From positions 62,001 through 126,000 of the IMG/VR virus record IMGVR_UViG_3300017963_000190: a stretch of 64,000 nucleotides of DNA, one strand, 5' to 3'. Shown one piece after another: positions 1 to 33,144 of the stretch. The notes beneath the pieces are model-generated. The model worked only from the letters and a program-made list of their open reading frames with translations. It was not told where the DNA came from and did no database searches. Position 1 is the first letter of the stretch. Each line of letters starts with the position of its first letter. Both the position numbers and the translations under genes were made by a program.

Positions 1-416
1 CACTCGGTGAAGGGCTTCCACTCACCTCCGTTGGGCCCACTCAGACGAAATCCCTTGACGAGCACATTAATGTACCTGCCTTCGTCTTTCGCTTTGAGTA
101 CCATACCATCCAGCTTGGCGTTGTAGTGCGCTCGTAGGCGATCCTCAATCGCCAGGATGGTAGCCAGCCGGGGGTTTTGTAGGACGAAAGTACTGAGATA
201 CGAATGCGTACGCTTGTTTTCCAGTCCAGTGACCTCGCTTTTGCAGTCTTCGCTAAGACCCTCGGTGAGGAGCTTTTTCACACGGGCTGTTATTCGAGCG
301 GTAATGCTCTCCCAGTTGAAGTCACCGCGTTTGTATTTTGCGTCTTTTGCCACCGCTAGCTTCTTGGGATGTGGCCTTACCGTGAAATCGATCACGACGA
401 ACGTTGGTTGTGGCAT
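1..416 (-). CDS. Hypothetical protein, 3'-truncated by the window edge (MPQPTFVVIDFTVRPHPKK...)
   Basis: Not in the ORF track. Manual translation from ATG 416 stays open to position 1; GGAGG Shine-Dalgarno at 422-426. Confidence 0.75.
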   Translation of the reverse strand, partial: MPQPTFVVIDFTVRPHPKKLAVAKDAKYKRGDFNWESITARITARVKKLLTEGLSEDCKSEVTGLENKRTHSYLSTFVLQNPRLATILAIEDRLRAHYNAKLDGMVLKAKDEGRYINVLVKGFRLSGPNGGEWKPFTE

Positions 417-472
417 CTTGGCCTCCGATTGCTGGTTCTGTGTACCTGTATTTTACAATACACGCTCACGAA

Positions 473-778
473 TCAGTCGGTAAGGCCAATCTCTCGCATC
501 ATCTCTTCTCGCCACGTGCTTCTGTCCTCACCTTTCTTCGCGGCTTTTTTCTTTGCCGTACCTTTTTTCTTGCTCTTGGTGGCGGCATGCCTCCCCCACA
601 AAAGTTCCCCTCGCTGTTTTGCTTGCGTGTACACCCGGCAAGCTTCTGCCACCGAGATGCGATCTGCTGATCCATTCGTTTTGACGAGGTAATATTCGTC
701 CTGCGCTTTTGTGGTAGATAGTGTTAGGCCACGCCCAGCCTTTGCCAATGGAGTAAATCCTTCTGATCTCTTACCCAT
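473..778 (-). CDS. Small basic hypothetical protein with a Lys/Ala-rich tract (possible DNA-binding)
   Basis: Track ORF 473..871; ATG 778 (MGKRSEG) overlaps the upstream stop by 8 nt and is the likelier start; KSKKKGTAKKKAAKK tract. Confidence 0.6.
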   Translation of the reverse strand: MGKRSEGFTPLAKAGRGLTLSTTKAQDEYYLVKTNGSADRISVAEACRVYTQAKQRGELLWGRHAATKSKKKGTAKKKAAKKGEDRSTWREEMMREIGLTD

Positions 779-1034
779 CTTTTTTATCCCCGTTCTTGTC
801 AATCCCGTCGCTTCGTTTGAACCTGGCCATAAGGGCTTCCCTGTTCTTCCGCAGGTGGCTCCCCTCTTCACGCCAGCGCAAATCCACTTCGTGTTTCTTG
901 TAAGGCTGCCAGGTATAAAGAGGGCATCCAGTTACTTGGCAGTCAATTCTGCCATCCACCATGTCTCCGCAGCAAATGAAGCACATGGCGCGCATGGCCT
1001 CTTTGCGTCCAGGTTTGTTTGTCTTGGTGCTCAA
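771..1034 (-). CDS. Small Cys-rich phage protein, probable Zn-binding
   Basis: CFICCG...DC...CPLY..QPY pattern; overlaps both neighbours. Confidence 0.7.
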   Translation of the reverse strand: MSTKTNKPGRKEAMRAMCFICCGDMVDGRIDCQVTGCPLYTWQPYKKHEVDLRWREEGSHLRKNREALMARFKRSDGIDKNGDKKDG

Positions 1035-1279
1035 TGCCCAAGTCCTCCGTTCACTTCCTGTGCACGTCTGCGGCCATTGCGGTCACAGAAGACGCGGATC
1101 TCCGCAACGAAGTCTTCCTCTGAAACGTCTTCGTGCAGCTCTAGTGCGATGACCTGCACGCGTGTTTCTTTTTTACCGTTGCGCTTTTTGATCACGCGTG
1201 AGCCGTGGTGCTCCAGGTTGTAGAAGCTGCCTGGCTCCAGTTGGTTTCCGTTAATAATTTCCATCCCTTTAAAAAGCAT
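1031..1279 (-). CDS. Hypothetical protein
   Basis: 82-aa ORF with AGGAG SD; 4-nt overlap with the next gene. Confidence 0.65.
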   Translation of the reverse strand: MLFKGMEIINGNQLEPGSFYNLEHHGSRVIKKRNGKKETRVQVIALELHEDVSEEDFVAEIRVFCDRNGRRRAQEVNGGLGH

Positions 1280-1287
1280 AGCTCTCC

Positions 1288-2724
1288 TTACGATACAGCA
1301 AGATGTGTTTTAGGTGTGATGATGAAGGGCGCAGCCTCGAACTCCCCTGGAGCCATCACTGCCAGCTGGGCGTTGACACGCTCTCTCAGCGTTGCCGCGG
1401 TCTGCGCCAGCCAGCGGACATCTTTCTGCTCGTAACGGTCGTGGGGGTAAAGTAGCTTGGCCAGCGCGGACGTGGTCTTCTCGATAGCAACCACATCCCG
1501 TCGGGTGGCCGCTGCAGGCATCTGCAGATCATTTATGAGATGTCGCCGGCTCCGGCCGCGTAGCTTCCCCAGCACCTGGCCAAGGTAGTCCACGATCAAC
1601 CCGTAACCGGAGCTAAGAGACCGTGGAGTGATCTTGGGGATCTCCCACCCAGGCAGGTAAGCGTGGATCCTGTCGAGAAGTGCGGTGTCCTGCACAACAG
1701 TTGGGAGCTCCTCGAAAAGATGTTTGTAGCGTGAAGCCGGGGAGCTCCCTTCGACTTCCAGGTTACCTGTCATGACCAGCGAGGCATCTGAGGAGTAGGT
1801 CTTTCCTCCGCGAGCAAATTGCCCACTCTCCAGGTAGTCCTTCAGCATGGAGATTGTCGTCACGCTATCGAATTGTGTATCCGCAATCTCATCAAGCACC
1901 ACTACCTTGAAGCTTCCGACAATGCCCAGCTCGCCGCTGGACACGTTGGCGAAAAGGGATGCGGCGGACACGTTGGCACCAGACGCAGTATAGACGCTAG
2001 GGGAGACGTTGCGCAGCAGGTAGGTTTTTCCTGTCTGGCGGGGTCCCAGCTCGATGAAATTGTAATTCGGCTCCACCGCTGGAAGTAGCCTGGCCAGGAG
2101 TAAAAACTTCATGTGGGGTGTAAGTGCCTCTGGCGCATATCCTACAGAAGTGAGCAGCACATCAATCCACTCGTCGACGGTGAACTGTGCTCGGTACTGG
2201 GCGAACTCTTCGAGGTCGGGCTCGTCTACCTGGAAAGGAAGGCATCCTGTGACAATCAGCCTGGAGGCGGATATCTTAGTCTTTTTGAGCTTTCCCCTTT
2301 TATACTCTAGTCGATACGCTCCCCACAGGCCGCCTGTGAGGAGGCGGGGGTATTTGTCGACAAGTGCTTCAAGAACCTCTACCCTGTTCTCGCCGGTGTA
2401 GGTAAGGGAGCCAACCAGCTCGCCACTACGCAGGTCTACACGAACGTTGAGTTTATCGATAACCAGCAGCTCCCCTTTCTTGAGGAGCTTGGCTTTGAGT
2501 AGCTCGCGCCGATCTGCCTCCGGCAACTTCCTGGCCACGTCCTCTCGTACACGTACCAGGTCGTCTGCCGCGGTACCTATGTTCACGTAATTGGCTACCA
2601 GATGCTCCACCACAAATTGTGGCAGCCTTGGTAATCCCGCATCCCGAACCAGTGATTTGTTGACTGCTAGGCTGCCGAATACCTGCCGAAGCTTGTGCTG
2701 TAATTGAGCGGAATTGCTGTTCAT
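1288..2724 (-). CDS. brxL: BREX BrxL-like (TIGR02688-type) MCM-related AAA+ ATPase lacking the C-terminal Lon protease domain
   Basis: N-terminal LPQFVVEHLV, LLTGGLWG, Walker A ELGPRQTGKT, Walker B VVLDEIAD, LKDYLESGQFARG, DTALLDRIHAYLPGWEIPKI. ATG 2724 has a GGAGG SD (478 aa). Confidence 0.85.
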   Translation of the reverse strand: MNSNSAQLQHKLRQVFGSLAVNKSLVRDAGLPRLPQFVVEHLVANYVNIGTAADDLVRVREDVARKLPEADRRELLKAKLLKKGELLVIDKLNVRVDLRSGELVGSLTYTGENRVEVLEALVDKYPRLLTGGLWGAYRLEYKRGKLKKTKISASRLIVTGCLPFQVDEPDLEEFAQYRAQFTVDEWIDVLLTSVGYAPEALTPHMKFLLLARLLPAVEPNYNFIELGPRQTGKTYLLRNVSPSVYTASGANVSAASLFANVSSGELGIVGSFKVVVLDEIADTQFDSVTTISMLKDYLESGQFARGGKTYSSDASLVMTGNLEVEGSSPASRYKHLFEELPTVVQDTALLDRIHAYLPGWEIPKITPRSLSSGYGLIVDYLGQVLGKLRGRSRRHLINDLQMPAAATRRDVVAIEKTTSALAKLLYPHDRYEQKDVRWLAQTAATLRERVNAQLAVMAPGEFEAAPFIITPKTHLAVS

Positions 2725-2749
2725 GTTGTACCTCCGTTCTGCTGAGCCA

Positions 2750-2778
2750 AATATAAGCTCGCTTGCCTCGTTTGTCAA
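2750..2778 (-). promoter_or_regulatory. Sigma70-type promoter driving the brxL-like gene
   Basis: TTGACA (2778-2773), 17-nt spacer, TATATT (2755-2750), in the intergenic gap. Confidence 0.8.
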
Positions 2779-2799
2779 GTGAGCGGCTTTACGGAGGGG

Positions 2800-3453
2800 C
2801 TATGGATGGGATTTAATGAGCCGTAGGAATTGGCGGAGCTTGTAGAGGTTGGGGTGTATGAGCACAATGCTGTAGGGTTTATTGTGGAGTACCCGTCTGC
2901 GTAGCAGCGACCACATCTGCTGAGGGGATTTGCGCCAGTCCCCTACGTGGTACATGACCGTAATGAGCCTGTACTGGGCGACTACGCGTTGCACGTGAGG
3001 GCACAGCACTGCGTGCGGTGGGCGCCAGAATCTTGGCCAGATCCCAAAGTATTTCTGGAATAATTGCTGGCTGAGAAATATCTCCCTGCGAGCTCTTCCT
3101 GTTGATGTGCGACACAGGTTAGCGTGGCTGATGCTATGATTTCCTATCGAGTGCCTCGCTTGGATGATAGCTTGTATCCATTTGTAGTGCTTTCGTGTAG
3201 GACGGCATGGACAGCGTTGATAGTGTAAGAGTGGGTAGCTGGGGATGAAGAACGTGCCACGTATCTGATGCTGTTTCAGAACCGCCAAAAATCGTGGCGT
3301 GATTGGCGTCGGATGGTCGTCAAAGGTCCAGCAGATCGTGTGCGCTCTAGTGAGTATCGTGTGCTGCTGGCACGGAAGATTTTTAGGTGGAGCGGATTTT
3401 GTATAGAGAGGGGAAGCGAGTGCTGCGAGGGCCACTAGCGTTACAGGTACCAC
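2800..3453 (-). CDS. Polysaccharide/peptidoglycan deacetylase (NodB/CE4 family), with a possible signal peptide
   Basis: TFDD, GTFFI, GNHSISH, WRPPH and IVLIH motifs; hydrophobic N-terminus. Confidence 0.85.
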   Translation of the reverse strand: MVPVTLVALAALASPLYTKSAPPKNLPCQQHTILTRAHTICWTFDDHPTPITPRFLAVLKQHQIRGTFFIPSYPLLHYQRCPCRPTRKHYKWIQAIIQARHSIGNHSISHANLCRTSTGRARREIFLSQQLFQKYFGIWPRFWRPPHAVLCPHVQRVVAQYRLITVMYHVGDWRKSPQQMWSLLRRRVLHNKPYSIVLIHPNLYKLRQFLRLIKSHP

Positions 3454-4097
3454 AGCCTTACTCTAATGGCGTGAGCAACGGCGCCGCAGGTGTTTCCTCT
3501 GTGGAGTCATCCTCCGTGGACTCTACTCCGTAGTATTTGCCAGGGTTTCTGCGGTGCATTGGGGTTTGGGAAGCTACTTGTGCGTGGTTCGCCAAGACGC
3601 GCAAGATATAGCGGTAGAGTCCCATCTTGCGTCCACTTTTCTGGTTGGCATGCTTGGACGCTTCTGTTTTTAGTTTTCGGTGGAGCGAGCGTGGCATATG
3701 CAGCTGGACGATGACCGTGTCTTCGTCGCTCTCATCGTCGATGTTAGGTACATACTCCGTCATCGCTTTTGAAATGATATTGGCTAGCTCTACCAGCCGT
3801 TGCCTTCCAGAAGGAGAAAGATTCTGCGCTGTCTGGTATTGGTACGCTAGGTCAGAGGCCAAGCCCTTTTTGTCGCTGCGTATGAAGTGCGCGAGTCGGT
3901 GAATGACGTCGTGGCAGGATCCACACAGCCACACGAGATTCTCTGGATCATCCGGAGATCCACCGAAGCCTTTCGGATGCTTATGATGCTCGTGGAGGAG
4001 TCGAACATCTACTGGAATCCCGCGGTGAATGTAACACACCGCGTTTTTGATTTGGTCAGCGGCCATAATACTCACCAGTAATTTTGTATAGAGAGGG
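3396..4097. repeat. Exact 17-bp direct repeat ATTTTGTATAGAGAGGG flanking the HNH gene
   Basis: Copies at 3396-3412 and 4081-4097. Confidence 0.9.
3458..4066 (-). CDS. HNH endonuclease domain plus C-terminal ribbon-helix-helix-like domain
   Basis: HEHHKHPKGFGGSPDDPENLVWLCGSCHDVIH (HNH); VIVQLHMPRSLHRKLKTEAS (RHH-like). Likely start ATG 4066. Confidence 0.75.
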   Translation of the reverse strand: MAADQIKNAVCYIHRGIPVDVRLLHEHHKHPKGFGGSPDDPENLVWLCGSCHDVIHRLAHFIRSDKKGLASDLAYQYQTAQNLSPSGRQRLVELANIISKAMTEYVPNIDDESDEDTVIVQLHMPRSLHRKLKTEASKHANQKSGRKMGLYRYILRVLANHAQVASQTPMHRRNPGKYYGVESTEDDSTEETPAAPLLTPLE

Positions 4098-4328
4098 TTA
4101 GCGAATGCGCACCGCTCCTCTATATAACAGTTTTTGAAGATTCCTGGAACGCCTGATGAGGTGCGGTTCAGTATGCTTGGGTACAAGTTCCATGTCTTCG
4201 TGTGCTGGAATTAACACACGGCGTTCCCCTCCATCAGGCAGCGGGACGTAGATTACAACGCTTCCAGCGTGTGGATTGTGGGCTACGACTTTTCCCTGCG
4301 CTACCGCTTTTGCTAGTTTTTGGCTCAT
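4098..4328 (-). CDS. Small hypothetical, probably virion-associated protein
   Basis: 4-nt overlap with the tape measure stop; resembles the N-termini of three fibre-region genes (see findings). Confidence 0.65.
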   Translation of the reverse strand: MSQKLAKAVAQGKVVAHNPHAGSVVIYVPLPDGGERRVLIPAHEDMELVPKHTEPHLIRRSRNLQKLLYRGAVRIR

Positions 4329-7300
4329 CCGGCTCCTCCTTTGCTCGCGTTGGTGTTACGCATTTTTCCTTTTGCCAGCTCATTTGCAGTGGCCGCGGCG
4401 TCGTGCGCTTTATCTATTTTGAACTCTGTTGTTTGTGTGAGTTGGTAAGTCATAGTTCCTGTATTGGCATCGTATTTACCTCGCTGCGCCATGCCTCCTA
4501 CAGGCTGATCTCCCCCGGCTACAGTTATATTTGGTGCAGCTGCCGCCGCCTGCTTCTCTTTTTCTTTCTGTAAGTAAGCTGCGGCCACTTCACCGTGCCC
4601 GATCCCAAGCCCCTTTTTAAGCCGTTCTTGTCTAACAGCTTCCCACTTGGCAGCTTCGGCCCCTTTGAGCGCCCCTCCGACACCAGCACCGTGAGCTCCG
4701 CTTTGCCTTATAGCTAGCTGCCATTTATCGACGAGCTCCGGAGTCAGTTTCCTGGCTTCTGCTATATCGATCCCTGCTGCTTTCATCTGCGCGGCGAAAA
4801 TGGTTCCTTGTGTCTTTCCTAATATGCCGCCTTTTGGATCCCCTTTACCAGACAAAAGCCGTTGGAGGACTGTCTTACCTCCACGATATTTGTACAGTCT
4901 GGTAGAGCGGCGGATGAGCTCATCCATAATCGCTTTTGTACGCTCTTTGGGATCTTTTATCTTTGCGTACTGCGACATGTCCATGCCCTTCATCTCTTGC
5001 ATGACGTCGGAGTACTGCCCGGCTTGCGTACCAGCTATTGATTTTCTTACCCCCTCTGTGTAGAGGTCTACCTGCCGTTTGTATTTCTTTGTGAATTTTT
5101 TGGCATCCGCTAAGCGAGCTTTATCTTGCTCTGTCATCAAGCTCGGCCACTTCTTGGACTTTTCGATGATGCGGACGTAGTCCCTGTACGCGTTGATCTC
5201 TCGTTTTGTAAGTTGTGACCTGCGGGTAACCCGAGTGCGCTGGATCTCAGCTAGAATTTTCTCTTGCTTCTTGGAGCGTTTATACCCTAGCAGGCTCATA
5301 GCTCCGCTAGCTAGAGTGCTCCCAATATACGCTGCTGGGAGCATAGCTGCAGACGCAGCCCCAGCGGCAAAGCCTTTTATCCCACCCTTACCAGAAATTC
5401 CCGCTTTAATATTGCCCATCAGACCTTTAGTAACCATTCCTTCAGCTACCATAGTCTGGAAGCGTTCCATTCCTTTTGTTTTGCCTAAAGTCCTCTTTTC
5501 GCCCTCGCCTAACCCTCTCTCGGCAAGAGCGCCAGTGAGCTCACCAGCTAGATTAACTCCAGATACCTCTGCAGCGGTTTTCCCTACAGCCGACGAGATG
5601 CCTTTGACATCAGTGATGCCTTTAATCTTTTTGAATTCGCCGATCGCGTAGGGAATGGCAGCAGCCACGGCAAGCGGGAGTGCGACCTTTCCTACAACAG
5701 CCCCAGCACCGCGGAGGGCCATACCAGCGCCCCTTCCTGCTTTACCTAGCATAGATGCGGCACGCGCTCCCTTTGTCATCGGCGCCGCTTTCGATATTTG
5801 TAACGTTCGCACGCCTCTTGAAGACACTCCTGCCGTCGCGGTGTATCCTTTTGGCAGGCGACCTCTTCCACGTATTCTTCTGAAGAGGCCTCTTAGTCTA
5901 CCTGCTCGTCCTCTGCCTCTACGCCCTCCGCCAAGGAGGTCCATGATGCCGCCGCCTCTGCTCAAGGCCATTCTACCAACAGCAGCCAGTATCCCAACAA
6001 GCAGACCCTTCAGGGTGTACTTCAACCAGTTCTTGATGCTTTCTATGGTCTCGTAGGTTTTTAAGGCAATCTTGTATTTTAGGTCGGTGGGTTTCTGCCC
6101 CTTTGAAACCATATCAGTAAGCTTTTTCTGCCAATTGGTGGATTCTTTCGCTGCATCACCAGTCTTCTCAGAAGACTCGTTTATGGACTCGTAGAATTCT
6201 CCTCCCTTACCAACAGACTCCAGCATTTTCGACGCAAGAAATCTATTCCCACCTGTATATTCAGCTACCATCTCAAGGCTGACGGCGCCCTTTCCAACCC
6301 CTTCCTGCATCTTCTGCAGTACCATCTGCATGAGCTTGGAGTCGCCTTTGGCCGCGTCCAGAAGCATTGATAGAGCTTGAGGGCTTTCCATCCCAATCTT
6401 CATGCCCTGTATGGATTTCATGGCGGAGCGTAGTCTTACTTGTGTGCTCTCCGAAAACCTACTCATGTTCGCTACTATTTCTTGCGCTGCTTGCACAGAG
6501 AACAGGCTTTTGAGTTTACCGCTTGACAGGTCCTCCATCATTTTAGCCATACCTTGGGAGGTAACTCGCATCTCTTTTGTGGTGAACCCAGCCGCTTTCA
6601 TTCGAGTAAGAAGCGGTACGAGCGCTTTAGCATACGCGCCTACATCTAGAGCTCCGGTTTCAAAAGTATCATTGGCTTGCCTAATAATTTTCAGGAAATC
6701 CTCTTTCATGATATTGCCGGTCTTAAGGGCGCGTTCTCCCATATCCTTAAGTTTCTGCGTGTATGTATCGAGCGCGCCGGCCACAAGAAAGGTTTCCTTC
6801 TGCGTCTCCTTCAAAGTTTTGTTGCTGGACTCAAGGCGGTTACGCATAAAATCGGCGGCGGTCGCTGTATCAGTACCAAACACTTTAGCTAGAACCACCG
6901 TGTCCTTCATCAATCCTTTGGTGGTTCCCTGCATATCTTTGTACGCACCAATCTGCGTTGCGAAGTTTGACAGCACTGCTTTCTGTGCTGCCTCTGCCTC
7001 CTCCTTACTAATGTGCAGCTGTCTAATAAGCGTGGCTTGGTAACGATTCGCCGAGTTCACTGTGTCGACATACTTTTGTAGATTCGCGCTGGCCTTTCCA
7101 ATCGAGGCAGAGGTAGTCAGCATCGCTTTGGAGTGGAGCTCCTGCCCAGCACGTAATTCCTTGAGAAGGCGGTTGTACTGTGCTCCCACACCGATCAGTT
7201 TTAGTAGGTCACCAGCAAAGTTTCTGGTAGCTTGACCAGCATCGCTGATCATCTTGTTTACAGTAAGGTTTTGCTGCGCAAATTCCCTGAATTTCTCCTT

Positions 7301-7534
7301 TTGCTCTTTCAGTGCGTCACTTAAACTGTGGACAGATTTCGTTGCTTCCTTACTGGCCCTATCAAAATTCTGGTAGTTTTCTATGGCTGGTGCCATAGCG
7401 TTGGACAGCTGACGAGTTTCTTTGTACGCCTCTGTCTGCGCAGTTGTAAAGTCATCGGTGGCTTTCTCTGCGCTCTTGGCAGCTTTTTCTAGTTTCCCTA
7501 AATCGCCAAATAGGGTTTTGCCGTCGTCAGCCAT
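4325..7534 (-). CDS. Tail tape measure protein
   Basis: 1069 aa, Ala/Lys/Gly-rich, helical/coiled-coil character with central hydrophobic segments; directly downstream of the frameshifted chaperone. Confidence 0.75.
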   Translation of the reverse strand: MADDGKTLFGDLGKLEKAAKSAEKATDDFTTAQTEAYKETRQLSNAMAPAIENYQNFDRASKEATKSVHSLSDALKEQKEKFREFAQQNLTVNKMISDAGQATRNFAGDLLKLIGVGAQYNRLLKELRAGQELHSKAMLTTSASIGKASANLQKYVDTVNSANRYQATLIRQLHISKEEAEAAQKAVLSNFATQIGAYKDMQGTTKGLMKDTVVLAKVFGTDTATAADFMRNRLESSNKTLKETQKETFLVAGALDTYTQKLKDMGERALKTGNIMKEDFLKIIRQANDTFETGALDVGAYAKALVPLLTRMKAAGFTTKEMRVTSQGMAKMMEDLSSGKLKSLFSVQAAQEIVANMSRFSESTQVRLRSAMKSIQGMKIGMESPQALSMLLDAAKGDSKLMQMVLQKMQEGVGKGAVSLEMVAEYTGGNRFLASKMLESVGKGGEFYESINESSEKTGDAAKESTNWQKKLTDMVSKGQKPTDLKYKIALKTYETIESIKNWLKYTLKGLLVGILAAVGRMALSRGGGIMDLLGGGRRGRGRAGRLRGLFRRIRGRGRLPKGYTATAGVSSRGVRTLQISKAAPMTKGARAASMLGKAGRGAGMALRGAGAVVGKVALPLAVAAAIPYAIGEFKKIKGITDVKGISSAVGKTAAEVSGVNLAGELTGALAERGLGEGEKRTLGKTKGMERFQTMVAEGMVTKGLMGNIKAGISGKGGIKGFAAGAASAAMLPAAYIGSTLASGAMSLLGYKRSKKQEKILAEIQRTRVTRRSQLTKREINAYRDYVRIIEKSKKWPSLMTEQDKARLADAKKFTKKYKRQVDLYTEGVRKSIAGTQAGQYSDVMQEMKGMDMSQYAKIKDPKERTKAIMDELIRRSTRLYKYRGGKTVLQRLLSGKGDPKGGILGKTQGTIFAAQMKAAGIDIAEARKLTPELVDKWQLAIRQSGAHGAGVGGALKGAEAAKWEAVRQERLKKGLGIGHGEVAAAYLQKEKEKQAAAAAPNITVAGGDQPVGGMAQRGKYDANTGTMTYQLTQTTEFKIDKAHDAAATANELAKGKMRNTNASKGGAG

Positions 7535-7581
7535 GGACTGTAATCCTTATATGTGCGTACCTCTTCACTCTAATAATATCG

Positions 7582-8061
7582 CTATGTTCTGCCTACCACT
7601 TTTGGTCTCACGAAAGCACGCACAAAGTTAAGGAAGTGATCTTTGTCGGACTCATACAGGTCTACAAACTCAGAGGTAGCGGCCCACTTCGGTGGAAGGA
7701 TACCTAGCTTGCGCCCGAAGGTTGACTTAAGCATCTCCTGAATCTCAGGGGCTAGTGTCATTGCTAAAGGCAGTCTAATTATATCCGGCGTCTCGCGTTC
7801 GGTGGTTTTCTTCTCCGACTCTACCATTTGGGCATGGTAGTCTGCTTTCTCCCAAACAATACCCAGGTCTTTGACAAGCCGGTTGTACTGATCCTCCTGA
7901 ACCTTGGTTTGCCAGAAGTCCATGAAAAAGAGCGCGGGTAGATTATGGAAAAGCATCCGCGCCCTAGGTTCTACAGGCAAGACCCCAGCTCGCGCTATTA
8001 CTCGTCCCCAGATTGCGAGGTGGGCGTCTCCTTCTGTTCTTGGGACGGTCTCGCTAAAGGG
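7582..8061 (-). CDS. Tail assembly chaperone 'T' segment, reached by a -1 frameshift
   Basis: The frame of track ORF 7582..7980 is open back to the slippery heptamer at 8061; the track's start is only a TTG. Confidence 0.7.
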   Translation of the reverse strand, partial: PFSETVPRTEGDAHLAIWGRVIARAGVLPVEPRARMLFHNLPALFFMDFWQTKVQEDQYNRLVKDLGIVWEKADYHAQMVESEKKTTERETPDIIRLPLAMTLAPEIQEMLKSTFGRKLGILPPKWAATSEFVDLYESDKDHFLNFVRAFVRPKVVGRT

Positions 8062-23688: not shown

Positions 23689-25554
23689 CTACTCCACGAT
23701 ATCTAGTAGTTCTTTTCGCGCAGCTGCGTCCAGTCCCATGTACAGTAGCACCCGATCTTGATCGTCTTTGCCTCCCCACACCACCTGGCACGTGTCTCGC
23801 GTTTTTTCATTCATCGCGTAGACACGTAATGCGTCTGCCCCAGATTCACCCAAGCCCTTGAATCGAGTAATGCGCAGCTTCCTGGGATTGCCTAGCTTCT
23901 CCCGAACTTCTGCTGCCGTATCTCCGAATACACGTTGTTTGGCAGTGACGCCCATGAATAGGGGACTGTTCACCACAAATAATCTGCCGGCCTCGATGAT
24001 CTCCGACAGGTGCTTGGCGAAGAATGCCAGCAACAGTGCTTGGATGTGGTGTCCATCTGTGTCCGCATCCATGAGCAAGTAGATTGCACGGTAACGGCAT
24101 TTCTTCAGGTCGAACACCGGTCCGATGCCTGTGCCGATAGCCTGTGCAATGTTGGACAGCTCTGTGTTCTTTAGAGCCTCCTCCACACCTCCCTTGCGTG
24201 CAGCGTTGAGCACCTTCCCCCGAAGGGGGAGTACTTCTTGGTAGTGGGTATTCCCCTTCAAGCTGATGCGTGCTTGCTTCACTGTGCCAAAGGCGCCATT
24301 CCCCTCGACGATGTAGAGCTCGCGTTTGTCCGGAGGGCAGTCTGGAGCGGCACAAAGCTTACCTGGTAGGATGTTTCTGGCTCCAGCGGCTACCTTCGTC
24401 CCACGCACAGCCTTTTGCTTAGCGCGGTATTTCTTGCGCTCGTCCCTAAGGTAGACTGCGTTTTCAAGCAGAGCTTCCATGCTTGTTGGGTTGGCCGCGG
24501 CGAACTTGCGCATGGCACCGTCTATGACCCGCTCAACGCCCTCCTGTACATCATGATTTTGTAGACTGCGTTTAGTCTGACCACGAAACTCCGGTTTGAG
24601 CACGTGGGCATGGACAATGGCGATCATGCCATCACGGATGTCCTCTCCACGTAGTCTACCCATTTTCCCATTTGCATGGTCGGTGACCACACGTTGGATG
24701 GCCTTTTTTGCGCCAGCAACGTGCACGCCGTGATCTGGGGTATGGGTAACGTTGACGAAAGAGCTCCAGCGTTCTGGTCCCCCTCGATCTGTCCAGACAA
24801 CCACAGCGTCCAGCGCATCTTCTTTCACCACGATTGGATCATGGAGATACGCTAGACCATCGGTCTGGGTCTTGAGCATATCTAACAGACCATCTTTTGC
24901 ATGGAACCGTTCTATAGGATCCCCGTTCACCTTGAACTCTATGGTTAGCCCAGGGCACAGGTAAGCGATGTCACGTAGCCTCCCCCGTACAAGCTTCGGA
25001 TCCAGCTTCGCCCTTTTGAAGATGGTGTAGTCCGGACGGAATTCAATCCTGGTGCCGAAACGCATCTTGCGCTTTGACCGCTTAACCTTAGTTACTGGCT
25101 CACCACGCTCAAAGGTTTGCTGGTACACCTTCTCATTCTGCACAGTCCAGACGATGAGCCTCTCGGATAGCGCATTGGTCGCCTTGACGCCCACACCATG
25201 CAGCCCAGCTACAGCACTGGTGTACGCTCCATGCCCAAACTTTCCCCCTGAGTGGAGCTTCGTTAGGACTGCGGTCAGCATCGGTAGCCCAGTCTTTTTG
25301 TGCTTCTTTACTGGGATGCCCCGGCCATTGTCGATGACAGTGACCACCTGCTGCTCGGTGTCTATTTTTACGCCGATCGCGGTAACATGTCCATCCATGT
25401 ACTCATCCACCGCGTTGGCTACTACCTCCTCGATGATGTGGTGCAGCCCTTCGGATCCAGTGTCGCCAATGTACATGGCCGGGCTTTGCCGCACCGGCTC
25501 CAGATTCTCCAGAATGCGTATCTGGTTGGCATCGTAGTGACGTTTTTTGGCCAT
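23689..25554 (-). CDS. gyrB: Type IIA topoisomerase subunit B (GyrB/ParE-like)
   Basis: GHKL ATPase (EVVANAVDE, DNGRGIP, GLHGVG); Toprim (VEG, PLRGK, DADTDG); RFKGLGE. Confidence 0.95.
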   Translation of the reverse strand: MAKKRHYDANQIRILENLEPVRQSPAMYIGDTGSEGLHHIIEEVVANAVDEYMDGHVTAIGVKIDTEQQVVTVIDNGRGIPVKKHKKTGLPMLTAVLTKLHSGGKFGHGAYTSAVAGLHGVGVKATNALSERLIVWTVQNEKVYQQTFERGEPVTKVKRSKRKMRFGTRIEFRPDYTIFKRAKLDPKLVRGRLRDIAYLCPGLTIEFKVNGDPIERFHAKDGLLDMLKTQTDGLAYLHDPIVVKEDALDAVVVWTDRGGPERWSSFVNVTHTPDHGVHVAGAKKAIQRVVTDHANGKMGRLRGEDIRDGMIAIVHAHVLKPEFRGQTKRSLQNHDVQEGVERVIDGAMRKFAAANPTSMEALLENAVYLRDERKKYRAKQKAVRGTKVAAGARNILPGKLCAAPDCPPDKRELYIVEGNGAFGTVKQARISLKGNTHYQEVLPLRGKVLNAARKGGVEEALKNTELSNIAQAIGTGIGPVFDLKKCRYRAIYLLMDADTDGHHIQALLLAFFAKHLSEIIEAGRLFVVNSPLFMGVTAKQRVFGDTAAEVREKLGNPRKLRITRFKGLGESGADALRVYAMNEKTRDTCQVVWGGKDDQDRVLLYMGLDAAARKELLDIVE

Positions 25555-25577: not shown

Positions 25578-25607
25578 AGTATAACCAGAAGTCTTGACGT
25601 TGTCAAG
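25578..25607 (-). promoter_or_regulatory. Sigma70-type promoter for the gyrB-gyrA-dam unit, with a palindrome over the -35
   Basis: TTGACA (25606-25601), 17 nt, TATACT (25583-25578); CTTGAC-N3-GTCAAG at 25593-25607. Confidence 0.85.
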
Positions 25608-30004: not shown

Positions 30005-30928
30005 TTAGAGGGTTGGGTACGGCCAACGGGAGATAAGAATTCTCCCTAGGTCAATGTATTCCCCTTTATTGACATCGTAGGTAAGTCGGATAGTGTAGGG
30101 TTTTCCGACAACATCGAACGTTCCACCGGACCTGTCTATGGTGGCTGTATGTGTGTCCCAAGATCCAGTTCCCGTAACCACTCCATTGGTCACTGTTACT
30201 GGCGCCTGAGCGACGTCGTATACTTCTATGGTCAGCTTTGTAGAGGGGGAAGCCGCGAACCTGGTGTAGACGTCTATATATAATGGACGGTAGGTGTTGT
30301 AGTACAACGTAATGTTCTGAATAACCTGTTGCACAGCAGGCACCGCTGTTGGAGAATTCTCCACTCTTTGATAGACCACAAAGTTGCTCCCGTCGAAGTC
30401 AGACTCCGTAACAGTGATATTTGGACCAGCGTTTGTGGTAGACGTGCGCGTGAGTTTGGGTATGAGCTCGATCGGAGCCGAGTTTATATAGTCCCGTGTA
30501 TAGTCAGCCGCGGTGCGCCGCGGGGCATTTAGTAGATGGGATTGTTCTAGAGGAACCCCTCCACCTGGATGGTACACCCAACCAAGCACCACCCCATTAT
30601 CGATCTCACTGTCGCTGAATATACCTTCCTCCAAGCTATACTCTACTGGTACACCACCTATAATGGCTCTGTCTTCGTGGGTAGCGATCAACGTGTAATT
30701 GGTGGCGGTGCCAGGAGAACTAAACAGAATTGTTTGGGTATCAGTTTCTCTCCAAACGATGCCGTCTTGTAGCAGGCCGGAGCCTATTGCCACTTCGAGG
30801 TTCCCAGCGGAATCCACAGTAAGCTCAAAGCCTAGGTAAACGCCCTTTTCGTTGAGCGTTCCATGGATGATGTTTTCTTGGCTATAACCAGCTGTGCCAC
30901 CGAAATTATAGTACCGTTCCTGTCCCAT
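30005..30928 (-). CDS. Virion structural protein (baseplate/fibre-associated)
   Basis: GVYLGFEL...GSGLLQDG N-terminus typical of fibre/baseplate attachment proteins; beta-rich C-terminus. Confidence 0.55.
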   Translation of the reverse strand: MGQERYYNFGGTAGYSQENIIHGTLNEKGVYLGFELTVDSAGNLEVAIGSGLLQDGIVWRETDTQTILFSSPGTATNYTLIATHEDRAIIGGVPVEYSLEEGIFSDSEIDNGVVLGWVYHPGGGVPLEQSHLLNAPRRTAADYTRDYINSAPIELIPKLTRTSTTNAGPNITVTESDFDGSNFVVYQRVENSPTAVPAVQQVIQNITLYYNTYRPLYIDVYTRFAASPSTKLTIEVYDVAQAPVTVTNGVVTGTGSWDTHTATIDRSGGTFDVVGKPYTIRLTYDVNKGEYIDLGRILISRWPYPTL

Positions 30929-30942
30929 ACTAGCTTACTCCT

Positions 30943-33144
30943 CTAGCCAAACAAAAGCATTCCCGTGTATTCGGCCGAGGTTAAGTGCACCTTGACCATC
31001 GTAGGAACAGCCCCAAGATCCGCTTCGTAGGTATTCATTTGTCCTGAAACTGGTGTTGCCGTAACAGCAGGTTGCCACGCTGTCCCGTTGTGGAATGAAA
31101 TCTGTGGTGGATCTTGATAAGTAGGGTAAAAATCTGTACGGTTTTCCTGTAACGGTACCAGAACGATCCTCCACTTTGGCCCAGAGTTGGTTCTCACAAC
31201 GAGCGCCCGCGTGACATACTGGCCGTAAGCTCCAGGCCGGAGCTTGCTGATGTTGTTCACTGGTAGCTTGCTTAACGCTGTTGCGTCCCGTTCAGTGTTT
31301 GGGATTTGATCGTGGTATCTGGGCCTTCGGAAATCCTCCAGGTATACGGTTTCGTTTCCGCCTGCCATACTATTGGCTAGGTACGTAAGGGCGTCTGCCT
31401 CTGGGCCCGTGTTGAGATACTCGCGCACAGTTGTGTCTACAATGCGTTTATCTCGTACCTTAGCCATCTGGATTCCATCCCACATCACTTCCGCGATGTG
31501 GCAGGCATCATGTAAATTATCATAAGTGTCGTATGGATTTATGAGAGCCCACATCATAATCGCGCTATTCGGGCCATCATTTTGCCGCTCTTCGATGATG
31601 AATTGGTCCACTTCCGCAAACAATACATCGGTGACCTGCAACGCGTTCTCCTCTAACGTATCCCTCGGAATAGGGCCAGGAGTTTGCCATGTCGCGCCAA
31701 ACTCAAACAAATGCTCGATGGCGGTTCCGGATGAGTCCTTTCCGTACAACCTTATTTTAACCGATAGGTTTGGGTCGGAGGTAGCGTCCGCCAACCCACA
31801 ACACACACGTGAAGGGCCGTAAAAGGAAATCGAGAACGTGTCGGATACACCTATAGCCTCTAAGCGCTTGTAGCAGTAAAACACCTGCGGCGCTTTGATA
31901 AGAGCTCCTTCATTGTCTATGAGTAGCTCGTACACCATGGGGAATTTTTGCGCATCCGCAAAGGGTTCCTGCGTGCTGCTTAGTTGAGTAAACGCCCTTC
32001 CTCCAGCTATTACGAGCTCGTCTTCTTCTGGGTTATTGGTTGAGAACGTTACTTCGTTTCTTCCTGCTGGAGGCTCGCCAGCGACCACTTTAGTGTAGTA
32101 CATCCCAATGGCTTCGTCTACAGGGGGATCGTAGGGAAACACCACTCTGTTTGTCTCGGCGACTATTTCTGCGGCCCAGTCCTCACTAGAGCTTTCTATC
32201 CAACAGCGTCCTAAACGAACCGGGAAATTTGGAAGCTCTACGTACTTAGCGTTCGGGTACGTTGTGTACGTTCCACTTCCATCATCGGTTTGTAGTGAGT
32301 TGTAGGGCACCGATACCTGGCAGCGCACGCCGGGGATTTTTTCTATAGACCTGTCATCTGATATTATTATTCCATGGTCGAGGTGCAGCTCATATGGAGC
32401 AAAGGCGCCAACAGCCAAATCATTTTGGGAGATGCCGTGAGGGTTGTTGTCGGTTGGGGGACCGCTTCCAACCTGCTCGCGATGCTGAACGTCGCGAGCA
32501 GAGAACCAAGGCCTGTTCCAGACATAGCTGTCTCTAGTGTGGTCGAAAGATGGCTGGACCTCAACCTGTAGGCTAACCGGATCCTGGACGCTTTGCATTG
32601 TCACGATGCAGAGGGGTATATAGTCAGCCCGTGTGTCAGCATCGTAGTTCAAATAAACGTCAACGGTGTCCACATTTATTTGGTCGCTCTGCGGGCTGAT
32701 ACTTTTTTCGCTGCCCATTCGAGCAGTGTAGGGAACCACTGCCTCCCCATAATCATTTAGTTCCTGGTCGGCTATCTCGACGATATAGCGCAGATAGATG
32801 ACATTGGCCACCCCTATAGATGGATCAGACAGCTCTATTTGACGAACCGTTTCGGTAAGAGCAACCCACATCCCACTTTGGGTAACCGCTAGCCCGGGGG
32901 TCACATCAATGGTTTCATTATTCACTGCGTTCTCTGTTACTCTAAAAGGGGTATCCTCGATCGTCTCGGCCAAGGACGGGTCCAGTGGAGTAACTATCCC
33001 GAAACTCGGATCCACAAACCACTCTGGATGCCCGATCATCAGCTGAATGTGCTGCACGAACTCGGCATTGTAGATGTCCGCCTGCATCTTGAGCCGGTCG
33101 AGAGATTGTCTGATGTTCCAGTTTAGTCCTGGTAGCTCTGCCAT
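30943..33144 (-). CDS. Virion structural protein (baseplate/fibre-associated)
   Basis: 733 aa, acidic; IDVTPGLAVTQSG..V and NNPHGIS fibre-type motifs. Confidence 0.55.
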   Translation of the reverse strand: MAELPGLNWNIRQSLDRLKMQADIYNAEFVQHIQLMIGHPEWFVDPSFGIVTPLDPSLAETIEDTPFRVTENAVNNETIDVTPGLAVTQSGMWVALTETVRQIELSDPSIGVANVIYLRYIVEIADQELNDYGEAVVPYTARMGSEKSISPQSDQINVDTVDVYLNYDADTRADYIPLCIVTMQSVQDPVSLQVEVQPSFDHTRDSYVWNRPWFSARDVQHREQVGSGPPTDNNPHGISQNDLAVGAFAPYELHLDHGIIISDDRSIEKIPGVRCQVSVPYNSLQTDDGSGTYTTYPNAKYVELPNFPVRLGRCWIESSSEDWAAEIVAETNRVVFPYDPPVDEAIGMYYTKVVAGEPPAGRNEVTFSTNNPEEDELVIAGGRAFTQLSSTQEPFADAQKFPMVYELLIDNEGALIKAPQVFYCYKRLEAIGVSDTFSISFYGPSRVCCGLADATSDPNLSVKIRLYGKDSSGTAIEHLFEFGATWQTPGPIPRDTLEENALQVTDVLFAEVDQFIIEERQNDGPNSAIMMWALINPYDTYDNLHDACHIAEVMWDGIQMAKVRDKRIVDTTVREYLNTGPEADALTYLANSMAGGNETVYLEDFRRPRYHDQIPNTERDATALSKLPVNNISKLRPGAYGQYVTRALVVRTNSGPKWRIVLVPLQENRTDFYPTYQDPPQISFHNGTAWQPAVTATPVSGQMNTYEADLGAVPTMVKVHLTSAEYTGMLLFG

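What the first reader, a model, noticed from the sequence alone, without database searches (positions are those of the whole stretch)
1288..2778. Solo BREX BrxL-like AAA+ ATPase in a phage, first gene behind a near-consensus host promoter
Seen: intact Walker A/B and BrxL-family motifs, no Lon domain, a TTGACA-17-TATATT promoter, and no pglZ/brxC/pglX beside it. Established: BrxL belongs to the anti-phage BREX system and is an oligomeric, MCM-related, DNA-binding AAA+ protein. Inference: a defence component captured by a phage and expressed early, acting as a dominant-negative or regulatory anti-BREX factor, as a weapon against competing phages, or as a DNA translocase/replication factor. The small co-transcribed genes (1279->1) are candidate partners.
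Basis: partly seen in the sequence, partly recalled or inferred. Interest (0 to 1): 0.75.

Follow-up and report, generated by a model that had tools for sequence, protein, structure and literature searches.

The report
Solo BrxL-like ATPase in jumbo phages
A lineage of uncultivated giant phages keeps, as a conserved early gene, a stand-alone copy of BrxL, the DNA-encircling ATPase known from the bacterial anti-phage BREX system. This shows that the motor can work without any other BREX part and offers a way to study it alone.

Summary
Window 1288-2724 (minus strand) encodes an intact 478-aa BrxL-family AAA+ ATPase with no Lon-like C-terminal domain. The listed TTG start at 2778 is really the -35 hexamer, so the true start is the ATG at 2724. 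The gene sits behind an 11/12 sigma-70-type promoter.

The record is a 260-kb tailed jumbo phage. It has no PglZ, BrxC, PglX or PAPS reductase, and neither does a complete 350-kb relative.

This is not a one-off capture. The protein belongs to a well-supported clade of 29 short proteins. All eight genomic contexts examined are phage contigs with the same gene order. The gene is among the best-conserved genes in its neighbourhood (42-61% identity).

The promoter is conserved. In both this genome and the complete relative it opens a promoter-dense early arm.

All ATPase residues and the DNA-contacting hairpin are invariant in the clade. The phage also encodes DnaB, a primase and a clamp loader, so BrxL is not its replicative helicase.

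Most likely it is an autonomous, early-made, ring-shaped dsDNA-binding motor that controls DNA replication in the infected cell. Its exact role is untested: takeover or exclusion, a helper for the phage's own DNA metabolism, or an anti-defence decoy. I rate it a new variant of a known kind.

The parts
2750..2778 (-). Sigma-70-type promoter: -35 TTGACA (2778-2773), 17-nt spacer, -10 TATATT (2755-2750). The expected transcription start is near 2743.
   Evidence: the only 11/12 site in window 1-8000; a -35 TTGAC(A/T/G) element with a -10-like hexamer lies 52-65 nt before the start codon in 6 of 8 related contexts; 20 such sites genome-wide against 2.0 expected.
2731..2735 (-). Ribosome-binding site GGAGG, six bases before the ATG.
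   Evidence: Read. AACGGAGGT is invariant in the alignment of the window with L003, L004 and L005.
1288..2724 (-). CDS of the BrxL-like AAA+ ATPase, 478 aa plus a TAA stop at 1288-1290.
   Evidence: The AF2 model (pLDDT 86.7) matches 8EMH BrxL with TM 0.92 normalised by the query.
2302..2685 (-). BrxL_N region (residues 14-141): a helical HTH-like part followed by an OB-like beta barrel.
   Evidence: PF20442, 7.9e-22; secondary structure; domain naming from PMC12839542.
1330..2253 (-). BrxL_ATPase domain (residues 158-465). It contains Walker A GPRQTGKT (2023-2046), Walker B VVVLDE (1888-1905), a beta hairpin with R305 and K308, sensor-1 N321 and the arginine-finger candidate R352.
   Evidence: PF13337, 9.2e-105. 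K233, T234, D278, E279, R305, N321, R352, R409 and R447 are invariant in 29 of 29 phage-clade proteins.
1031..1279 (-). 82-aa ORF starting 8 nt after the BrxL stop, with its own GGAGAG. It has no homologue in the related phages.
771..1034 (-). 87-aa Cys-rich (zinc-finger-like) ORF that overlaps the previous stop (ATGA). Homologues follow BrxL in L007 and L004.
473..778 (-). 101-aa basic ORF (ATG at 778), overlapping the previous gene by 8 nt. The gene at the same position in L003, L004, L005, L007 and L008 is a weak homologue (20-34% identity).
   Evidence: (alignment A4).
2800..3453 (-). Upstream neighbour, a polysaccharide deacetylase. It is the last gene of the preceding, tail-side block and is conserved next to BrxL in all relatives; L008 and L103 have one extra gene in between.
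3458..4186 (-). HNH endonuclease gene. The probable true start is the ATG near 4066, giving about 202 aa as in relatives. It is conserved in the same position.

Best explanation
This is a functional, stand-alone BrxL-family (MCM-clade) AAA+ ATPase that a lineage of uncultivated jumbo myovirus-like phages carries as a conserved core gene.

Shown: the protein consists of the BrxL N-terminal DNA-binding region plus the ATPase and lid, with no Lon-like C-terminal domain. Every catalytic residue is intact. No other BREX gene exists in the phage. A conserved sigma-70-type promoter precedes the gene, and the gene is the first in a promoter-dense arm of small genes that also encodes a phage sigma factor.

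Inferred: host RNA polymerase transcribes it immediately after infection. With ATP it assembles into a ring around double-stranded DNA, as Acinetobacter BrxL does. It probably forms a single ring, because the domain that glues two BrxL rings tail-to-tail is missing.

The role I commit to (inference): control of DNA replication in the infected cell at the onset of infection. Most likely it clamps or translocates on non-phage DNA (host chromosome or co-infecting elements), using the BREX effector logic for the phage's benefit and independently of PglX, PglZ and BrxC.
For: Family and fold. Catalytic and DNA-contact residues are invariant in 29 of 29 clade members. The N-terminal OB region is more basic than in cellular BrxL (+3.4 against -2.1 net charge), and K/R99, which aligns with BrxL R104, is kept in 26 of 29. 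Phage-only clade: SH-aLRT 100 and 99, forming one side of a branch against 79 cellular sequences. Same synteny in 8 contexts. BrxL identity of 42-61% exceeds that of most neighbouring genes. No BREX partners in this record or in the complete 350-kb relative with terminal repeats. Promoter and early arm. In the complete relative the arm runs from its BrxL gene at about 31 kb to the genome end. A sigma factor gene lies inside the arm. The phage has its own DnaB-like helicase, primase, clamp loader, PolA, topoisomerase II and ligase elsewhere, so BrxL is an extra DNA motor rather than the replicative helicase. No integrase or ParA was found, so a lysogeny-defence role is unlikely. Biochemistry of BrxL from PMC10164562: ATP-dependent assembly on dsDNA, DNA-stimulated ATPase, C-terminal domain used for ring-ring dimerisation, required for restriction without DNA cleavage, and no helicase activity detected.
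Against: There are no expression, biochemical or genetic data for any clade member, and no RNA run holds the sequence. Without a methyltransferase partner it is unclear how the ring would tell phage DNA from other DNA. Strong conservation and fixed synteny fit a housekeeping DNA-metabolism role as well as, or better than, a takeover role. The early arm also holds ParB-like genes and, in relatives, PolX-like genes. Basic residues of one pore-side loop are lost in the phage clade: BrxL R265 aligns with G264, and region 240-275 has net charge +1.0 against +3.4, so DNA contacts may differ. Early timing is inferred from the promoter type only. The host is unknown.
Confidence: 0.4

Rival explanations
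1. It helps the phage's own DNA metabolism. As an MCM- or RadA-like ring it would assist origin opening, recombination-dependent replication, branch migration or genome organisation, working with the ParB-like and other DNA proteins of the same arm.
For: It is one of the most conserved genes of the neighbourhood, with fixed synteny, as expected for a core enzyme. After BrxL, MCMs are the next structural matches. ParB-like genes and PolX-like genes share the arm. Catalytic and DNA-hairpin residues are invariant. The phage relies on recombination proteins: RecA/UvsX, SbcCD, DprA and UvrD.
Against: The phage already has a DnaB-like helicase, primase/helicase, clamp loader and two other helicases. 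Helicase and strand-exchange activity could not be shown for BrxL (PMC10164562). The gene heads the host-promoter early arm rather than sitting with PolA and topoisomerase at window 21-29 kb.
Confidence: 0.3
2. It is an anti-defence factor. As a truncated BrxL look-alike it would poison or titrate host BrxL-containing immunity (BREX, or the Gemmatales TerB/Mrr-BrxL pairs) by forming mixed rings that cannot dimerise, or by sequestering partner proteins.
For: It is made first in infection. It lacks exactly the domain that joins two BrxL rings. The cellular proteins with the highest identity (42-49%) are BrxL-Lon proteins of Gemmatales, a possible host group. All known anti-BREX proteins are early phage proteins.
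Against: A decoy does not need invariant Walker B, sensor, arginine-finger and DNA-hairpin residues in 29 of 29 members. Arms-race genes are usually fast-evolving and patchy, whereas this one is slow-evolving and always present. At under 50% identity to any cellular BrxL, co-assembly is doubtful. The tree does not nest the clade within a host group. The host and its defence content are unknown.
Confidence: 0.15
3. It is an artefact or passenger: an assembly chimera, a fragment of a bacterial BREX island in a misclassified contig, or a decaying remnant of a captured long BrxL.
For: The record is only 74% complete by CheckV and is linear. Some 'phage' records in GenBank that hit BrxL are in fact whole BREX operons.
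Against: One contig with zero differences spans the junctions in two runs. Eight syntenic contexts come from different samples. The genome has a tail sheath, baseplate J, an endolysin-like gene and a full phage replisome. A complete relative with terminal repeats carries the same gene. The ORF is intact with all motifs. None of the 80 best cellular matches from the scan of 185,579 species genomes exceeds 49% identity.
Confidence: 0.03

Closest known systems
Acinetobacter type 1 BREX BrxL (PDB 8EMC and 8EMH; PMC10164562)
   Same: It shares the N-terminal HTH-like and OB region and the MCM-clade AAA+ domain: E=6e-80, 33% identity, TM 0.92 over the whole phage protein. Walker A and B, the beta-hairpin arginine, the arginine finger and the residue aligning with R104 are all conserved.
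   Different: It lacks the roughly 200-residue Lon-like C-terminal domain that makes the tail-to-tail double ring. It has no BrxA, BrxB, BrxC, PglX or PglZ partners. It is encoded by a virus. One basic pore-side loop is lost (R265 aligns with G264), and the N-terminal region is more basic.
Short BrxL of type 4 BREX (NCBIfam TIGR02688; for example the operon on MT835511)
   Same: It has the same two-part architecture without a C-terminal extension, and it scores above the TIGR02688 cut-off (419.7 against 329.3 bits).
   Different: Type 4 BrxL sits in an operon with PAPS reductase, BrxC, PglZ and cysteine desulfurase. None of these is present in the phage. In the tree the phage clade is separate from the 481-aa cellular short forms.
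Gemmatales (Planctomycetota) BrxL-Lon proteins paired with TerB-domain, Mrr-type or unknown upstream genes
   Same: These are the cellular proteins with the highest identity (42-49%). They also mostly operate outside canonical BREX: PglZ is missing in 4 of 5 genomes.
   Different: Most keep the Lon-like C-terminal domain, they are chromosomal, and they have a different upstream partner gene. The phage clade is not nested among them.
MCM replicative helicases of archaea and eukaryotes
   Same: They share the AAA+ clade and an OB-containing N-terminal tier, and they are ring-shaped DNA motors. They are the next structural matches after BrxL (E about 1e-10, TM 0.40-0.48).
   Different: Only 11-16% identity, and the protein has no Pfam MCM hit. 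No helicase activity is known for BrxL. The phage has a DnaB-type helicase.
Known phage anti-BREX proteins (T7 Ocr, T3 SAM lyase, ICP1 OrbA)
   Same: They are early phage gene products linked to BREX biology.
   Different: They are small inhibitors unrelated to any BREX component, targeting PglX, SAM or BrxC (titles and abstracts listed). None is a BrxL homologue. No sequence comparison with them was run here.

Membership tests
BrxL family (Pfam BrxL_N + BrxL_ATPase; NCBIfam TIGR02688) | N-terminal BrxL_N domain followed by the BrxL_ATPase domain, scoring above the curated cut-offs | tested here: met
   78.1 bits (cut-off 28.2), 350.3 bits (cut-off 25) and 419.7 bits (cut-off 329.3).
BrxL family (Pfam BrxL_N + BrxL_ATPase; NCBIfam TIGR02688) | Fold of solved BrxL across both domains | tested here: met
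   model pLDDT 86.7; top 24 PDB matches are all BrxL chains, with TM by query of 0.83-0.92.
BrxL family (Pfam BrxL_N + BrxL_ATPase; NCBIfam TIGR02688) | Intact ATPase site (Walker A Lys, Walker B Glu aligning with E280, sensor 1, arginine finger) | tested here: met
   K233, E279, N321 and R352 are present and invariant in the clade.
BrxL family (Pfam BrxL_N + BrxL_ATPase; NCBIfam TIGR02688) | ATP-dependent ring assembly on dsDNA and DNA-stimulated ATPase | not testable with these tools
   This needs purified protein. Only conservation of the DNA-contact elements could be shown.
Long (type 1) BrxL, TIGR02653 | C-terminal Lon-protease-like (or HKD) domain | tested here: not met
   339.9 bits against a cut-off of 628.25, with the match ending at profile position 462 of 675; alignment stops at BrxL residue 465 of 679; no Lon_C domain anywhere in the genome.
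BREX system (any type) | Co-occurrence with PglZ and BrxC, plus PglX or PAPS reductase | tested here: not met
   none found in the 260-kb record or in the complete 350-kb relative. The 20-kb contexts of seven related contigs lack them as well.
MCM helicase family (PF00493) | Significant match to the MCM P-loop domain model | tested here: not met
   no MCM hit at E<=0.1. There is only structural similarity, TM 0.40-0.48.
Lon protease | Lon_C proteolytic domain with a Ser-Lys dyad | tested here: not met
   The PHROG 'protease' hit is marginal (2.3e-4).
Phage early (host-RNA-polymerase) gene class | Sigma-70-type promoter directly upstream, conserved in relatives and shared with a cluster of similar promoters | tested here: met
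   The actual timing of transcription was not testable, because no RNA run holds the sequence.

The most novel reading that the evidence does not exclude
The BrxL module is an autonomous effector. A single AAA+ ring, made first in infection, loads onto DNA and arrests or redirects replication with no methyltransferase, PglZ or BrxC. Giant phages would then use offensively, against the host chromosome or rival elements, the same motor that BREX uses defensively. The phage clade is as deep as the split between the cellular BrxL types, so it could even be close to the form from which defence systems recruited BrxL.
Probability: 0.2. Interest if true: 0.85.

Novelty: new variant of a known kind. 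Interest (0 to 1): 0.6.

Why it matters
How BREX stops phages is still unresolved, and BrxL is its least understood effector. It is needed for restriction but not for methylation, it encircles DNA, and it resembles MCM, yet no activity beyond DNA-stimulated ATP hydrolysis is known. A natural BrxL that has worked alone for a long evolutionary time, in a virus, shows that the N-terminal and ATPase core is a self-sufficient functional unit. It also gives a minimal protein, without the C-terminal domain or partners, in which to ask what the ring does to DNA. It would be an example of a defence-type motor used as a conserved viral early gene. Together with the Gemmatales TerB/Mrr-BrxL pairs seen in passing, it indicates that BrxL-like motors are used well beyond BREX.

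Tried and rejected
1. Single-protein scan of IMG/VR found nothing. The alignment-based scan found only two further viral contigs, so the lineage is rare in that collection.

2. The reference phage collection gave six hits at 35% identity or less. The two examined are whole BREX operons, one type 1 and one type 4, not solo genes. The other four were not examined.

3. Complex prediction of BrxL with the conserved 101-aa downstream protein returned 'no answer' (score 0.00). This is not evidence either way.

4. ESM Atlas look-ups of the 87-aa and 101-aa proteins gave only viral hypothetical proteins and no functional lead. Pfam and PHROGs gave nothing for the 82-, 87-, 101-, 150- and 153-aa proteins.

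5. The replicative-helicase idea was set aside, because the phage has a DnaB-like helicase, primase and clamp loader.

6. The idea of a prophage-borne defence gene expressed in a lysogen was set aside, because no integrase or ParA is present in this genome or in the complete relative.

7. Origin from Gemmatales by recent transfer is not supported. Gemmatales proteins have the highest identity, but the phage clade joins at the central polytomy of an unrooted tree.

8. Host identification failed.

9. No RNA run holds the sequence, so promoter use could not be checked.

Full report
1. WHAT IS THERE

The ORF listed at 1288-2778 on the minus strand is real and intact. Its TTG 'start' is the first triplet of the -35 hexamer. 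The coding sequence begins at the ATG at 2724, six bases after GGAGG. This gives 478 aa, identical to a 478-aa protein already present in the public protein collection.

- The protein matches Pfam BrxL_N (7.9e-22) and BrxL_ATPase (9.2e-105).
- It scores 419.7 bits on NCBIfam TIGR02688, the short BrxL model, whose cut-off is 329.3. It fails TIGR02653, the long Lon-bearing form (339.9 against 628).
- It matches five PADLOC BrxL models. PHROGs has no real family for it.
- Against solved structures it aligns to Acinetobacter BrxL (8EMC, 8EMH) at E=6e-80, with residues 3-464 matching BrxL 4-465 of 679. The protein is therefore the N-terminal region plus the ATPase, and it stops where the linker to the Lon-like domain begins.
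- An AlphaFold model (pLDDT 86.7) matches BrxL chains with TM 0.83-0.92. MCM helicases follow at TM 0.40-0.48.

2. THE GENOME

The window is bases 62,001-126,000 of a 260,067-bp IMG/VR virus record, estimated 74% complete.

- It encodes a tail sheath, baseplate J and an endolysin-like protein.
- It encodes family-A DNA polymerase, topoisomerase II, a DnaB-like helicase, DnaG-type primase, clamp loader, ligase, RecA/UvsX, SbcCD, UvrD and ribonucleotide reductase.
- It has two sigma-factor genes.
- No isolated phage is close; the DNA polymerase is 27% identical at best.
- No integrase or ParA was found.

It is a virulent-looking, uncultivated jumbo myovirus-type phage. Two public runs, a sediment metagenome and a seawater metagenome, hold the region.

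3. SOLO STATUS

PglZ, BrxC/BrxD, PAPS reductase, Eco57I/PglX-type methylase and Lon_C were searched for in all six frames of the whole record, and none was found. Apart from PAPS reductase, the same families were searched in IMGVR_UViG_3300018080_000098, a 349,793-bp relative with direct terminal repeats rated 100% complete. None was found there either.

4. NOT A CHIMERA AND NOT A ONE-OFF

- A single 3,255-bp Logan contig with zero differences covers window 626-3880 in both runs. The two runs may be one dataset filed twice.
- Base composition shows no break.
- The 5.8-billion-protein search found 23 clusters at 54-63% identity, all about 470 aa. The next tier, at 47-50%, is dominated by 690-aa proteins with a Lon domain, several named as Gemmataceae BrxL.
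- In a tree of 94 family members, the window's protein lies in a clade of 29 short proteins with SH-aLRT 100.
- In a second tree, with 79 named cellular sequences from the scan of 185,579 species genomes, the 29 form one side of a branch (SH-aLRT 99). No cellular sequence falls inside.
- I looked up genomic context for members of all three subclades: L003/L105, L004, L005/L006, L007, L008, L102 and L103. Every one shows the same order: a 900-1,069-aa protein, a 76-78-aa protein, HNH endonuclease, polysaccharide deacetylase, BrxL, then small ORFs. A ParB-like gene follows further downstream in most of them. L008 and L103 have one extra gene before BrxL.
- Against the window, BrxL is 42-61% identical across these contigs. 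That is more than the deacetylase (34-46%), the 413-aa and 359-aa structural proteins (26-47%) and ParB (32-50%). Only two small structural proteins are more conserved.

It is an old, vertically inherited, strongly constrained gene of this phage lineage.

5. PROMOTER AND TIMING

TTGACA-17-TATATT at 2778->2750 is the only 11/12 match in the first 8 kb.

- An equivalent element lies 52-65 nt before the start codon in six of the eight contexts. AACGGAGGT is invariant in the four sequences that were aligned.
- Genome-wide there are 20 sites at 11/12 or better, against 2.0+-1.0 in shuffles.
- Seventeen of these lie on the minus strand between genome positions 1,957 and 64,778. This stretch of mostly small genes begins, in the direction of transcription, with BrxL.
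- In the complete relative the promoter-like sites fill 2.3-31.0 kb next to one genome end. The most upstream site, at 30,973, sits directly before its BrxL gene, which starts at 30,910.
- One of the phage's sigma factors is encoded inside this arm.

This layout fits a host-RNA-polymerase early region headed by BrxL. The timing itself is inferred, because no RNA data exist.

BrxL and the 82-, 87- and 101-aa ORFs are separated by 8 nt or overlap, so they probably form one transcription unit. By local alignment, the 101-aa protein has a weak homologue at the same position in five of the seven related contigs.

6. IS IT AN ENZYME OR A SHELL?

In all 29 clade members the following are invariant:
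- Walker A K233 and T234;
- Walker B D278 and E279 (E279 aligns with BrxL E280, whose mutation abolishes restriction);
- sensor-1 N321;
- the arginine-finger candidate R352, plus R409 and R447;
- R305, at the tip of the beta hairpin between Walker B and sensor 1.

K/R308 is kept in 25 of 29. K/R99, which aligns with BrxL R104 (the only pore mutant that lowered restriction), is kept in 26 of 29.

The OB-like N-terminal region is more basic than in cellular homologues (+3.4 against -2.1). The loop at 240-275 has lost basic residues (+1.0 against +3.4; BrxL R265 aligns with G264).

The protein therefore looks like a working DNA-binding ATPase with a somewhat shifted DNA interface. In Acinetobacter BrxL the C-terminal domain makes the tail-to-tail contact between two rings and may restrain the ATPase. 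Without it, a single, possibly less restrained ring is expected. This is inference.

7. WHAT IT DOES

This cannot be settled by computation. My estimates are:

- 0.4: an autonomous early DNA clamp or translocase that controls replication of DNA in the infected cell, most likely non-phage DNA. For: its position at the head of the early arm; the only known biological role of BrxL is a non-cleaving block before phage replication; and a separate complete replisome is present. Against: there is no evident self/non-self discrimination.
- 0.3: a helper in the phage's own replication, recombination or genome organisation. For: core-gene behaviour and DNA-metabolism neighbours.
- 0.15: an anti-defence decoy. 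For: early expression and the missing dimerisation domain. Against: invariant catalytic residues and slow evolution.
- 0.03: an artefact or passenger.
- The rest: something else.

8. COMPARISON WITH WHAT IS KNOWN

By sequence, fold and motifs it is a member of the BrxL family (short architecture, TIGR02688). It is not a member of a BREX system, because the partner test fails. It is not the long type 1 form, not an MCM by sequence, and not a Lon protease.

[quoted passage not shown] I found no paper describing a phage-encoded BrxL. The 'phage' GenBank records I examined that hit BrxL carry whole BREX operons.

The highest-identity cellular proteins, from Gemmatales, are themselves mostly not in BREX loci. 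PglZ is absent from four of five genomes. Their upstream genes encode TerB-domain, Mrr-type or unknown proteins.

9. VERDICT

The 'captured defence gene' reading should be replaced by 'a deep, phage-specific, conserved clade of stand-alone BrxL-type motors heading the early region'. Novelty: a new variant of a known kind. Interest: 0.6.

Caveats:
- The trees are quick maximum-likelihood searches with SH-aLRT support only, and they are unrooted.
- Family absence in the 74%-complete record is backed by one complete relative only.
- The host, expression and activity are unknown.

Noticed in passing
Genome G000 1,957-64,778 (window 1-2778 is its upstream end); L106-L108 (G006 1-31 kb): A minus-strand arm of mostly small genes is packed with sigma-70-like promoters (TTGACA-N16/17-TATACT). 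It holds 17 of the 20 genome-wide sites at 11/12 or better, against 2 expected by chance. In the complete relative the equivalent arm abuts a genome end with terminal repeats. It looks like a host-RNA-polymerase early or takeover region.
   Followed up: partly
G000:C1:40287-41177 (-) and about 184831-186264 (+), both outside the window: There are two phage sigma-70-family sigma factor genes (Sigma70_r2 at 3.8e-20 and 6.9e-12). One lies inside the early arm, which suggests a sigma cascade for middle and late genes.
   Followed up: partly
L034:8051-9964, L058:8246-9856, L024:6622-8676, L022:7813-9900, L033:8122-9906: In Gemmatales MAGs the long BrxL-Lon gene is preceded by a TerB-domain protein, an Mrr_cat restriction-endonuclease protein or an unknown 600-700-aa protein. 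Four of five of these genomes have no PglZ at all. These are candidate two-gene, non-BREX systems built on BrxL.
   Followed up: partly
L009:7354-11497 (MAG GCA_027435735.1): A short BrxL (498 aa) follows a Ser/Thr protein kinase (447 aa), an 81-aa protein and a 371-aa protein with no Pfam hits. No PglZ lies within 10 kb. This is another non-canonical BrxL context.
   Followed up: no
L008:8830-9963: One related phage has an extra ClpX/ClpB-like AAA+ gene (AAA_2, ClpB_D2-small) inserted between the deacetylase and BrxL. In that contig no promoter-like site lies directly before BrxL.
   Followed up: no
window 2800-4328: A 76-aa protein, an HNH endonuclease and a polysaccharide deacetylase form a conserved trio at the end of the tail-side block in all relatives. 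A deacetylase is an unusual conserved phage gene and might act on the host envelope.
   Followed up: no
window 4325-7534: A 1,069-aa protein has no Pfam or PHROG hit and only 23-32% identity between relatives. It has coiled-coil-like, Gly/Ala/Arg-rich and hydrophobic stretches. Its position suggests a tape-measure-like protein.
   Followed up: no
L002:10155-11810 (genome 56155-57810, minus strand): A 551-aa classic-clade AAA ATPase (phrog_8638, 4.9e-96) lies in the early arm. It is about 30% identical to the AAA-ATPase of Corndog-type mycobacteriophages and is conserved in the related jumbo phages.
   Followed up: partly
L110 (CAKLQH020000045.1) and L109 (MT835511.1): GenBank records labelled as phage carry complete BREX operons. 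One has type 1 (ATPase, 'restriction enzyme', PglZ, long BrxL). The other has type 4 (PAPS reductase, 1,380-aa ATPase, PglZ-like DUF7862-7864 protein, short BrxL, cysteine desulfurase). They are either mislabelled bacterial DNA or BREX carried on mobile elements.
   Followed up: partly
window 25578-25606 (genome 87578-87606, minus strand): A lone 11/12 sigma-70-like promoter lies outside the early arm, immediately downstream of the DNA polymerase gene and before the 621-aa ORF at 23689-25554.
   Followed up: no
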